A stretch of 63,628 bases of DNA, the filler included, from Olpidium bornovanus S191 (taxonomy: Eukaryota > Fungi > Olpidiomycota): assembly GCA_017911155.1 (NCBI GenBank). It is 31 parts of 31 records of this genome, joined end to end, with 100 filler letters (N's around TTAATTAATTAA, not from the genome) between each part and the next. Parts side by side here need not be neighbours in the genome. Positions count along the whole stretch, not along the records: positions 2,757 to 4,721 come from JAEFCI010001810.1; 30 more parts are not named here. One strand, 5' to 3'. Positions 2,874 through 4,721 of this stretch are shown piece by piece (the first letter of the stretch is position 1; each line of letters starts with the position of its first letter). The notes beneath the pieces were generated by a model. The model saw only the letters and a program-made list of their open reading frames with translations. It searched no databases and was not told the DNA's origin. A program made the translations under genes and the position numbers.

Positions 2874-4721
2874 ATGACGGGGTGGACGGCTGTAATTCCT
2901 GCCGCCATACTCAACGGACGCTCCGGAGTCACAGCGATCGTATCATCATCAGGGACGTCTGTGCTATCGTGTTCCATAGGGGAGACGACTGTCGACATCA
3001 GCGTGCCCTATCTGAACTCGTTGACTATCGGCTTCGACATGTCTCGGCAGCTTGTTGGTGTTCGAACTCTTATTTTGCGTCCGCACCCGTTTCTGCTCAA
3101 CTGCTTATTCGAACTTTTCCGCCGATGCCCTTTGCCAAAGGACGGAGTGTATCCCGGGAAAGCGTTTGTCGACCATCAATACAAGCCCCTCGGCATGCAA
3201 TTGTCGACGGACTTCTGTTTCCCCCGCCAAAGCCTGATCATCCTCGGAACCGCTGTAGATTATACCGGCAGCCGCAACTACCTGGGCGGGCAGGTGATCG
3301 TGACAAACTCGAATTTCGAACACGGTTACCAGCTCCGGGATCTGCTGCGAGGCCCAGACGGGACGCGCGCGGGAGAGTACAGCTTGTGCAACGCGCTGAC
3401 GGACGAGCAGTGCAAAGAGCTGCTCGTCATGGACGCGGTAGTTGTCGACTACAGGATCTACTTCCTCACCTCTGCCGGCGTCTTCTATACCGACAGGTTC
3501 AGGGACAACAGCAAGCAGCTGCGTCCGACGAAGTTCGCCCGCGCCGTCACCGGAGTCGCGGAGCTGGATTCGCCCACTGCGGACTACATCAGCCTCGGGG
3601 TGCGGATGTACGGGAGGTGGGACTGCAGTCGCGTCGATCCGCGGTACATTTATCTAGCGTACAACAGCGCGGCAGGCGAGCCGCCATCAAATCTGGTGGT
3701 GTCGTCAACTGAGGATGTCGTCCGCAACGTCTGGACGAGTCCTGTTCAACTGCCCGCGCTCCTTGGCTACGACGGCGGGTACAGAATCGTCAAAGCCCTG
3801 CGGCTCCCTGTCCGAAACTTCGTTTTGTATCTCGTCGGCAAGCTGTCTGGCCTCAGCCCGGCCGGCTGCAGCGGTTTCGGTTGCCTTTACGATAACGCCG
3901 TGACGCTCCGCCAGGAGGGGTCGTTCGACAACTCGGCGGCGAACGTCAGCGTCGGCTTCGCGTTCCCCGCGGACGCCGTGTTCAGGTCCCTGTACCTGAA
4001 CCCCTACGATCTCGCCGCGTACGCCTACGGCGACGGGGCGTGGGTGTCGAACGACGCGACCAACCAGTACCGCCGCCTTTTCCGGCTCGACGGCGGGGAA
4101 ACCGTGGCTTCGGTGCTGGCAGACCCCGCGGCGGGCGTCGTCGCCTTCACGACGGACCTGGGCTCCGTGTACCACGCGCGGTCCTTCGCCCGGGACGCGG
4201 CGAAGGTCCGCACGTTCGTCAAGAGGGCCGGGGCCCCCGGGTCGGCGGCGGCCGCGCAGATGGAAGCGCTGGCGCACGGCCTCCACGGGGGATACCGGCG
4301 CCTGCAGTTCGACCACCCGGACGGCTACCCGGCGAACTCGAGCCTCTACCCGCGCGGGTTTCTGAAAGGCCCCTCGGGCGAGCTGCGCGGCGCGGCGGAC
4401 CCGTTCCTGCGCGGGCTGCCGGTGCCCGTCGGGTCGGCGGTGCCGGCGGCGGACCTGTCGTTTCCGGCCGCCCTCGTGCCGTCGATCGTCGGGGACGAAA
4501 GGGTCAGATTTTACGCGCACGGCCCAGCCGGCGGCGGCCGGACGTTCGAGGCGCGGCACGTGGGAAGCGTCATACGGTCCCGGGGATCGGGGGCGGCGAA
4601 GATCATGTCCTTGAATAAAGACGCGACGGTTGCGGACTGCCTCGTCGTCGAGCGCTTGGTCCCGGAGTCGGCCTCCGACAGCCCAGCCGTGGGCCTGACC
4701 CTTTCGGCTCTGAACTTCAGC
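2874..4721 (+). CDS. CATSPERB: CatSper channel auxiliary subunit beta homolog (extracellular region), partial
   Basis: Collinear motif matches to mammalian CATSPERB as recalled: LLVMDAVVVDYRIYFLTSAGVFYTD vs LSLVDMVLTNHFLVILTSLGLFVSE; FAFPADAVFRSLYLNPYDLAAYAYGDGAWVSNDATNQY vs FRFPSSFSSPVGMVFHPRSHFLYAYGNQIWLSVDGGNTF; FTTDLGSVY vs FVSQRGKVY; RHVGSVIRSRGSGAAKI vs IHYGKVIHSGKTGRAYI. A possible in-frame intron lies at 3054-3140. Confidence 0.8.

What the first reader, a model, noticed from the sequence alone, without database searches (positions are those of the whole stretch)
2874..4721. CatSper-beta (sperm flagellar Ca2+ channel subunit) homolog in a fungus
Seen in sequence: an ORF of about 600 codons with several collinear motif blocks matching animal CATSPERB (LTSAGVF ~ LTSLGLF; YAYGDGAWVSNDATN ~ YAYGNQIWLSVDGGN; FTTDLGSVY ~ FVSQRGKVY; QFDHPDG ~ YYDHLG; HVGSVIRS..SGAAKI ~ HYGKVIHS..TGRAYI). 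Established: CatSper controls sperm hyperactivation, has a patchy eukaryotic distribution, was reported in the blastoclad Allomyces, and is absent from non-flagellated fungi. Inference: this organism, which also has DNAAF2 and IFT46, may keep a CatSper complex including the large extracellular beta subunit to control zoospore swimming, host sensing or encystment. If the organism is Olpidium-like, this would place CatSper in the closest flagellated relatives of terrestrial fungi.
Basis: partly seen in the sequence, partly recalled or inferred. Interest (0 to 1): 0.88.

Follow-up and report, generated by a model that had tools for sequence, protein, structure and literature searches.

The report
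CatSper-beta gene fragment, probably zoosporic fungus
This short contig carries the middle of an expressed, spliced gene for the large outer "beta" subunit of the CatSper flagellar calcium channel, from a soil-associated eukaryote that is probably a swimming-spore fungus. It is a real but fairly ordinary addition to a family already known in such fungi.

Summary

**Homology**
- A direct Pfam scan gives only two sub-threshold hits, both to CATSPERB domains and in the right order.
- phmmer against 1.8 billion proteins finds 42 relatives, the best at E 9e-50 and about 30% identity. The top hits are chytrid proteins that carry CATSPERB_2nd, head and C domains above Pfam's cut-offs.
- A profile of the window plus these relatives hits mouse CATSPERB (7EEB/9UBW chain E) at E 2e-30. 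The next family scores E 1e-3.
- An AlphaFold model (pLDDT 79) matches mouse and human CATSPERB first: Foldseek E 1e-19 to 2e-21, Z 30.7 against about 19 for generic propellers. The paralogs gamma, delta and epsilon score 1e-10 or worse.

**Corrections to the gene model**
- RNA contigs show that the "ORF" reads through an in-frame 87-nt intron (3054-3140).
- The exon starts at 2871 and is spliced to an upstream exon, so ATG 2874 is not a shown start.
- The mRNA continues about 2 kb beyond the contig end, which is where the C-terminal domain and membrane anchor should lie.

**Limits**
- Fungal origin is likely but not proven; the gene tree cannot place the sequence.
- The pore subunits cannot be searched from this piece.
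- CATSPERB in flagellated fungi is already documented, so this is a new member of a known kind.

The parts
2757..2870 (+). 3' end of an upstream intron, with acceptor AG at 2869-2870. The in-frame TAG at 2868-2870 belongs to it.
   Evidence: RNA contigs of runs X1 and X2 carry 27 unlike letters before 2869 and then follow the window. The upstream exon ends ...GTCAATAAG, in an open frame. A minor unspliced contig covers 2757-2898. A branch-site-like ACTAAT lies about 40 nt upstream of the AG (read).
2871..3053 (+). Coding exon of 61 codons, N-terminal to the propeller. It has no Pfam match and no membrane segment.
   Evidence: Splice joints; Pfam gives nothing; hydropathy scan.
3054..3140 (+). 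Spliceosomal intron, 87 nt, GT..AG, in frame and free of stop codons.
   Evidence: Skipped in the 3,804-nt (X1) and 3,206-nt (X2) RNA contigs. GC is 0.49 against 0.65 for the coding sequence. A soil-metagenome relative has a 1-nt insertion here. phmmer alignments to homologs start just after it.
3141..4436 (+). Seven-bladed beta-propeller, equivalent to the CATSPERB '2nd domain' (mouse residues about 165-525).
   Evidence: AF2 model with pLDDT 79 and pTM 0.75. VIA-align gives Z 30.7, 336 residues aligned and rmsd 3.5 to 9ubw_E residues 165-525; the next fold scores Z 19.4. Profile domain 1 hits mouse CATSPERB at i-E 1.6e-19. The weak direct Pfam CATSPERB_2nd hit lies at 3402-3545.
4437..4721 (+). 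Start of the CATSPERB head domain, cut off by the contig end.
   Evidence: Profile domain 2 aligns to mouse CATSPERB 510-684. The window reaches only profile position 512 of 622. Direct Pfam CATSPERB_head hit: E 0.16-0.2, profile positions 1-59 of 179. The RNA contig of X1 continues 2,038 nt past 4721.
4020..4172 (+). Most conserved block of the family (YAYGDGAWVSNDATN ... FTTDLGSVY).
   Evidence: Invariant G and S and nearly invariant D in alignment A1. 41% identity over 73 residues to the Ptychodera flava protein annotated CATSPERB-like, E 3e-13. Aligned to mouse LYVYGSQIWVSMDGGN.

Best explanation
The piece is an internal fragment of a multi-exon, transcribed and spliced gene for a CATSPERB-family protein. 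CATSPERB is the large extracellular 'canopy' subunit beta of the CatSper flagellar Ca2+ channel. The window encodes a short N-terminal exon, the seven-bladed beta-propeller and the first part of the head domain. The rest of the head, the C-terminal domain and the single membrane anchor are inferred to lie on the roughly 2 kb of mRNA beyond the contig end. By analogy with mouse, the propeller and head would sit above the pore tetramer, contact the neighbouring canopy subunits and scaffold channel assembly. The C-terminal helix would dock on a pore subunit. The likely role is control of Ca2+ entry into the flagellum of a swimming zoospore or gamete, and so of steering. Shown: homology, fold, splicing, expression and coding constraint. 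Inferred: the missing domains, the partners, the flagellar location and the physiological role. The source is a soil-associated eukaryote, most probably a zoosporic fungus of a lineage with no annotated proteome. That assignment is likely but not proven.
For: phmmer against 1.84 billion representatives gives 42 hits; the best is E 8.8e-50 with 30% identity over about 520 residues. The top hits are Chytridiomycota and Gonapodya proteins that carry Pfam CATSPERB_2nd, head and C domains above the cut-offs. There is a direct hit to the Ptychodera flava protein annotated CATSPERB-like (E 1.2e-6 library-wide; pairwise 3e-13), which has all five Pfam CATSPERB domains. The profile A1 hits mouse CATSPERB at E 2.4e-30, while the next family (xyloglucanase) scores 1.4e-3. 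The AF2 model has pLDDT 79. Foldseek PDB gives CATSPERB chains at 1.2e-19 and 4.6e-19, then epsilon, gamma and delta at 1.8e-10 to 4e-7, then generic propellers near 1e-6. VIA-align gives Z 30.7 against 19.4. AFDB/Swiss-Prot gives human and mouse CATSPERB at 2e-21 and 8e-21. RNA contigs from two studies show the GT..AG intron removed, an upstream splice and continuation beyond the contig. GC3 is 0.825. A soil relative that is 95-96% identical has 15 of 28 listed exonic differences synonymous and second codon positions depleted (p 0.006). Another relative has only in-frame indels. Full-length homologs end in one hydrophobic anchor. Mouse mechanism: beta contacts delta and gamma at the canopy roof, anchors to CATSPER4 and is needed for assembly (PMC13484710).
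Against: The direct Pfam scores are below the gathering cut-off (13.5-13.9 and 11.7-12 bits against 27). The defining C-terminal domain and the membrane anchor are not in the window. No pore subunit could be looked for. The gene tree does not place the sequence inside fungi: support is 40/0 for sister to the fungal clade, and alternatives are not rejected. The amino-acid composition is unlike the rest of the alignment. Two deep RNA runs with the same organism label gave no reads on this gene in the roughly 6% of each run that was read. So either the label is a host or mixed sample, or expression is stage-specific.
Confidence: 0.88

Rival explanations
1. The gene is a true CATSPERB, but the contig comes from a non-fungal eukaryote: another opisthokont, or a protist co-occurring in a non-axenic or host-associated sample. 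It would then say nothing about fungi.
For: The window falls outside the chytrid + Gonapodya + Sorochytrium clade. A grouping with the ichthyosporean Chromosphaera costs only 0.03 lnL (p-AU 0.42). No protein among about 15 billion is more than 32% identical. CATSPERB also occurs in Chromosphaera and in the malawimonad Gefionella. Runs with one organism label either hold the transcript or yielded none, and DNA runs with that label hold only 13-18% of the words, as expected for a minor component of a mixed sample.
Against: All twelve best-scoring hits that carry a name are zoosporic fungi. In the best tree the window is sister to the fungal/environmental clade, and nesting within core chytrids is not rejected (p-AU 0.19). 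The 5' splice site GTTGGT fits the GTNNGT pattern, which from my own knowledge is common in fungi; this is weak evidence.
Confidence: 0.27
2. It is not beta but another CatSper canopy paralog (gamma, delta or epsilon), or an unrelated sortilin/BNR/GH74-type beta-propeller protein.
For: All of these share a seven-bladed propeller. Generic propellers reach Z 18-19 and Foldseek E about 1e-6. Xyloglucanases appear at E 1e-3 in the profile search.
Against: CATSPERB beats the paralogs by 9-10 orders of magnitude in Foldseek, and beats generic propellers by 11 Z units. The only Pfam families hit directly, and the families hit above cut-off by every close homolog, are CATSPERB-specific and collinear.
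Confidence: 0.03
3. It is a decaying or repurposed remnant: a CATSPERB gene kept without a working CatSper channel. A 2026 survey found that CatSper is not universally retained in flagellated fungi.
For: [quoted passage not shown] The sequence is very divergent (about 30% identity). 13 of 28 listed differences to a close relative change the amino acid.
Against: The gene is transcribed and correctly spliced in two independent studies. The frame stays open over 588 codons with GC3 0.825. Synonymous changes are in excess, and the indels in relatives are all in frame. The family's invariant residues are kept. CatSper proteins evolve fast even where they are functional (PMC5362262).
Confidence: 0.07

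Closest known systems
Mouse and human CATSPERB (PDB 7EEB and 9UBW chain E; UniProt A2RTF1, Q9H7T0)
   Same: The same seven-bladed propeller followed by the head domain, with collinear conserved blocks. This is the best structural match (Z 30.7; Foldseek 1e-19 to 2e-21) and the best profile match (E 2.4e-30).
   Different: Only 16-19% identity in the structural alignments. Direct sequence search does not connect the two. The window lacks the Ig-like and C-terminal domains and the membrane helix because the contig ends. The N-terminal 'CATSPERB_1st' domain is not detectable.
CATSPERB homologs of Chytridiomycota and Monoblepharidomycetes (e.g. Chytriomyces hyalinus KAJ3235481.1, Gonapodya sp. KAJ3336492.1; some NCBI records are already named 'cation channel sperm-associated protein subunit beta family domain-containing')
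   Same: These are the closest sequences: E 1e-50 to 1e-30 over the whole propeller and head region, with 27-32% identity in the phmmer hits. They carry CATSPERB_2nd, head and C domains and end in one membrane anchor.
   Different: Chytriomyces is 31-44% identical to most other chytrids (one, Cladochytrium replicatum, is at 27%) and 27-28% to non-chytrids. The window's 27-32% therefore sits at a between-phylum distance. It branches outside their clade, though without support.
CatSper canopy paralogs CATSPERG, CATSPERD and CATSPERE
   Same: Propeller-based ectodomains of the same channel complex. They are the second-best structural matches.
   Different: Foldseek E is 1e-7 to 1e-11 against 1e-19 to 1e-21 for beta. 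No Pfam gamma or delta/epsilon family was hit by the window; the closest homologs scanned hit none either.

Membership tests
CATSPERB (CatSper auxiliary subunit beta) | Beta-propeller ectodomain of the CATSPERB type (Pfam PF21548, CATSPERB_2nd) | tested here: met
   The direct Pfam score is below cut-off (13.5-13.9 bits against 27). The profile of the window plus relatives hits mouse CATSPERB at E 2.4e-30. The model superposes on 9ubw_E residues 165-525 with Z 30.7, against 19.4 for the next fold.
CATSPERB (CatSper auxiliary subunit beta) | Head domain after the propeller (PF22830) | tested here: inconclusive
   Only the first part is in the window: profile positions up to 512 of 622, and Pfam positions 1-59 of 179 at E 0.16-0.2. 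It aligns to the start of the mouse head region. The rest is cut by the contig end.
CATSPERB (CatSper auxiliary subunit beta) | CATSPERB C-terminal domain (PF15149) ending in a single membrane helix | not testable with these tools
   This part lies beyond 4721. The RNA contig of X1 continues for 2,038 nt. That is enough for the roughly 555 residues that Chytriomyces has after the equivalent point. Full-length homologs have the domain and one C-terminal hydrophobic segment.
CATSPERB (CatSper auxiliary subunit beta) | Beta rather than the gamma, delta or epsilon paralog | tested here: met
   Foldseek gives beta at 1.2e-19 (PDB) and 2.1e-21 (Swiss-Prot models), against epsilon, gamma and delta at 1.8e-10 or worse. 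All Pfam hits of the window are CATSPERB families; its closest homologs carry CATSPERB families above cut-off and no other CatSper subunit family.
CATSPERB (CatSper auxiliary subunit beta) | Co-occurrence with the pore subunits CATSPER1-4 and the other canopy subunits in the same genome | not testable with these tools
   Only this 1,965-base piece is available. Scans of metagenome contigs found no further DNA of this organism, and its protein is not on record.
CATSPERB (CatSper auxiliary subunit beta) | An expressed gene under coding constraint (not a pseudogene) | tested here: met
   Spliced RNA contigs occur in two studies. GC3 is 0.825. 15 of 28 differences to a soil relative are synonymous, and second positions are depleted (p 0.006). 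Indels in relatives are in frame.
Fungi (zoosporic lineage, e.g. Olpidiomycota or Chytridiomycota) as the source | Gene or genome phylogeny places the sequence within Fungi | tested here: inconclusive
   The best hits are all zoosporic fungi. The tree leaves the window in a polytomy with Chromosphaera and the fungal clade, and AU tests reject none of four placements.

The most novel reading that the evidence does not exclude
The contig belongs to a zoosporic lineage outside the core chytrids and blastoclads, Olpidium-like, meaning the closest flagellated relatives of the terrestrial fungi. If so, the CatSper canopy, and by implication the channel, was kept right up to the point where fungi lost the flagellum, and was lost together with it. 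Three observations are consistent with this: the contig is about 2 kb long, as in a fragmented, metagenome-binned assembly; no annotated proteome holds the protein; and the transcript appears in runs that may be labelled with a host as well as in soil metagenomes. None of these is specific.
Probability: 0.35. Interest if true: 0.45.

Novelty: new member of a known kind. Interest (0 to 1): 0.3.

Why it matters
CatSper is the most complex known ion channel and controls steering of animal sperm. Its patchy presence in unicellular flagellates and zoosporic fungi bears on when flagellar Ca2+ steering evolved and how it was lost. This fragment adds one very divergent, expressed CATSPERB from a lineage with no annotated proteome, and it shows that a Pfam cut-off alone would miss it. 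If the organism proves to be a sister lineage of terrestrial fungi, it would tie the loss of CatSper to the loss of the flagellum. On its own it does not change what is already documented for Allomyces and chytrids.

Tried and rejected
- **Single-sequence AlphaFold** was useless (pLDDT 31).
- **phmmer of the window against PDB** found no CATSPERB chain.
- **The word-indexed protein search** found nothing with the window. With the family alignment it found only the query's own first sequence. The first blank may be partly due to the length limit, which excludes full-length CATSPERBs; in both searches the word index returned only unrelated candidates.
- **The ESM Atlas feature search** gave only unnamed or unrelated clusters below 0.9.
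- **Recovering more of this organism's DNA** failed. The search for related loci and an exact 27-mer in metagenome contigs found nothing. The exact-product look-up found nothing.
- **Cai et al. 2014** (MBE; PMC4169769) is not held. What it reports is cited only through other papers.
- **Placing the organism by the gene tree** failed. None of four constrained placements was rejected, and a fifth test, with Sorochytrium, did not finish.
- **Rejected readings:** that ATG 2874 is the start; that this is a sortilin/VPS10 or BNR propeller; and that the antisense ORF 3705-4559 is a gene. That ORF lies opposite GC3-rich coding sequence and nothing supports it.

Full report
**What is in the sequence.** The piece 2757-4721 holds one long open frame on the + strand, from ATG 2874 to the piece's end (616 codons). 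GC rises from about 0.53 to 0.75 along the piece. In the coding part GC3 is 0.825, against GC2 of 0.495, which is a strong coding signature.

**Gene structure from RNA.** Twenty-four public runs were listed. Eight of them, from two studies (2022 and 2025) under one coded organism label, hold 64-90% of the sampled words. Laying the contigs of two of these runs showed three things.
- There is a joint 3053|3141 that skips 87 nt with GT..AG ends. That intron has GC 0.49 and encodes ORF residues 61-89.
- RNA contigs diverge from the genome before 2869, where 27 unlike letters continue the open frame. The acceptor is therefore AG 2869-2870 and the exon starts at 2871. The in-frame TAG at 2868-2870 is intronic, and ATG 2874 is not a demonstrated start.
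- The spliced contig covers 3141-4721 without a gap and runs on for 2,038 nt (X1) beyond the piece.

The coding parts are thus 2871-3053 plus 3141-4721, 588 codons with no stop. Both ends are incomplete.

**Is it CATSPERB?** A direct Pfam scan returns only two families at E<=10. Both are CATSPERB domains, in the right order, and both are below the cut-off: 2nd domain E 0.03-0.04, head E 0.16-0.2. phmmer against PDB finds no CATSPERB.

Intermediates settle the question.
- phmmer against 1.84 billion representatives gives 42 hits. The best is E 8.8e-50, with 30% identity over residues 89-610, starting exactly after the intron.
- The named top hits are Chytriomyces, Physocladia, Entophlyctis, Gonapodya, Rhizoclosmatium, Polyrhizophydium, Cladochytrium, Podochytrium and Quaeritorhiza.
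- Further down come Sorochytrium (a blastoclad), Chromosphaera (an ichthyosporean), Gefionella (a malawimonad) and the Ptychodera flava protein annotated CATSPERB-like.
- These proteins carry CATSPERB_2nd, head and C domains above Pfam's cut-offs. Ptychodera has all five CATSPERB domains.
- The window aligns directly to Ptychodera with 41% identity over 73 residues (E 3e-13).
- A profile of the window plus 18 relatives (A1) hits mouse CATSPERB (9ubw_E, 7eeb_E) at E 2.4e-30 in two collinear stretches. The next family, xyloglucanase, is at 1.4e-3.

**Structure.**
- With A1 as the alignment, AlphaFold gives pLDDT 79.2 and pTM 0.75.
- Foldseek against PDB ranks the two CATSPERB chains first (1.2e-19 and 4.6e-19). 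Next come CATSPER epsilon, gamma and delta (1.8e-10 to 4e-7), then GH74, sortilin and other propellers near 1e-6.
- VIA-align gives Z 30.7, with 336 residues aligned at rmsd 3.5 between model residues 2-432 and mouse residues 165-525. The best unrelated propeller scores Z 19.4.
- Against Swiss-Prot models, human and mouse CATSPERB lead at 2.1e-21 and 7.7e-21.

**What is missing.** The window reaches profile position 512 of 622, which is inside the head domain. The C-terminal domain and the membrane helix are not in the window. Full-length homologs all show one hydrophobic segment 10-30 residues from the C-terminus. The roughly 2 kb of extra mRNA matches the roughly 555 residues that Chytriomyces has beyond the equivalent point. 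This is an inference, not an observation.

**Is it a live gene?** It is spliced and present in RNA contigs of two studies.
- A soil metagenome holds genomic contigs 95-96% identical that run through both introns, with a 1-nt insertion in the intron.
- A run with another organism label holds pieces 95-97% identical. Its only indels are +6 and -3 nt, in an Ala/Gly-rich stretch.
- Of 28 listed exonic differences, 15 are synonymous. All 14 third-position changes are silent, and second positions are depleted (3 of 28, p 0.006).

**Which organism?** No protein among about 15 billion is closer than 32% identity. The exact product is not on record, and the window's own search found nothing. The source therefore has no annotated proteome in these collections.

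The maximum-likelihood tree (33 rows, 604 columns, LG+C20) puts the window outside an 83/90 clade of all chytrids, Gonapodya and Sorochytrium. It sits in a polytomy with Chromosphaera, inside a 94/95 clade that excludes Ptychodera and Gefionella. AU tests reject nothing:
- with Chromosphaera, p 0.42
- inside core chytrids, p 0.19
- with Gonapodya, p 0.40

The window's amino-acid composition deviates from the rest, so long-branch effects are likely. A zoosporic fungus is the most likely source, because all the best hits are such fungi, but this is not shown.

Some circumstantial points fit an obligate, host- or soil-associated organism from a fragmented, binned assembly.
- The published Olpidium bornovanus working assembly has 13,695 contigs in 29 Mb from non-axenic zoospores (PMC7865070).
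- DNA runs under the same label hold only 13-18% of the words.
- Two deep RNA runs under that label gave no reads, in the roughly 6% of each run that was read.

None of this identifies the organism.

**How it most likely works.** In mouse, CATSPERB contacts delta and gamma at the roof of the extracellular canopy. It anchors to CATSPER4 through its single helix, forms the beta-beta interface of channel dimers, and is required for assembly of the whole channel (PMC13484710). The window encodes the propeller and the start of the head, which are canopy parts. I infer the same scaffold role for a flagellar Ca2+ channel that steers a zoospore or gamete. Transcripts of CATSPERB, G and D are reported from sexual stages of Allomyces (bioRxiv 10.1101/230292). 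Partners, location and physiology are untested here.

**Novelty.** CatSper subunits are reported in the Allomyces macrogynus genome; Cai & Clapham 2012 and Cai et al. 2014 are cited for this. NCBI already names some chytrid proteins as CATSPERB-family. A 2026 survey of 184 fungal proteomes lists CATSPERB (9 proteins), CATSPERG, CATSPERD/E and CATSPER1-4 as specific to flagellated fungi, and not universally retained (PMC13358043). That survey included Olpidium bornovanus (BUSCO 27). The per-species table is not held, so I cannot say whether CATSPERB was scored there. This is a new, very divergent member of a known kind.

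Noticed in passing
P0027 and P0048-P0050 (Gefionella okellyi, EukProt transcriptome): A malawimonad encodes a full-length CATSPERB-like protein: PKD domain, then CATSPERB_C at E 1.2e-42, then a C-terminal anchor, in four isoforms. [quoted passage not shown] No paper in the library mentions both CatSper and malawimonads. If this is not contamination, the canopy subunit is older than stated.
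   Followed up: partly
P0006, P0007, P0021, P0027 versus P0036: Non-animal CATSPERB homologs begin with a PKD domain, whereas the one animal protein scanned (Ptychodera) has 'CATSPERB_1st' there. Chromosphaera has PKD plus a weak 1st-domain hit.
   Followed up: no
P0002, P0005, P0004 (chytrid gene models): Several chytrid CATSPERB models are fused to unrelated domains. Two are named 'Golgi transport complex subunit 1' (one of them, P0005, has a Vps51/COG1 N-terminal domain), and P0004 has a cyclin domain. These are probably mis-merged neighbouring genes, which hides the family under wrong names.
   Followed up: no
window 4494: The window has G here, but the RNA contigs of both studies (X1 from 2022, X2 from 2025) have T. 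This changes Asp to Tyr at a variable position. It is a strain difference or an assembly error.
   Followed up: partly
window 2757-3320, 3422-4205 and 4507-4693 in soil-metagenome run X11; 3339-4328 in run X16: Close relatives (about 95-97% identical) occur as genomic DNA in a soil metagenome and in a run under a second organism label. X16 has in-frame indels at 4224 (+6) and 4243 (-3), in an Ala/Gly-rich stretch.
   Followed up: partly
window 3705-4559, minus strand: A 284-codon antisense ORF lies opposite the GC3-rich coding region. It is Arg/Pro/Gly-rich and has no support, so it is most likely a by-product of composition.
   Followed up: no
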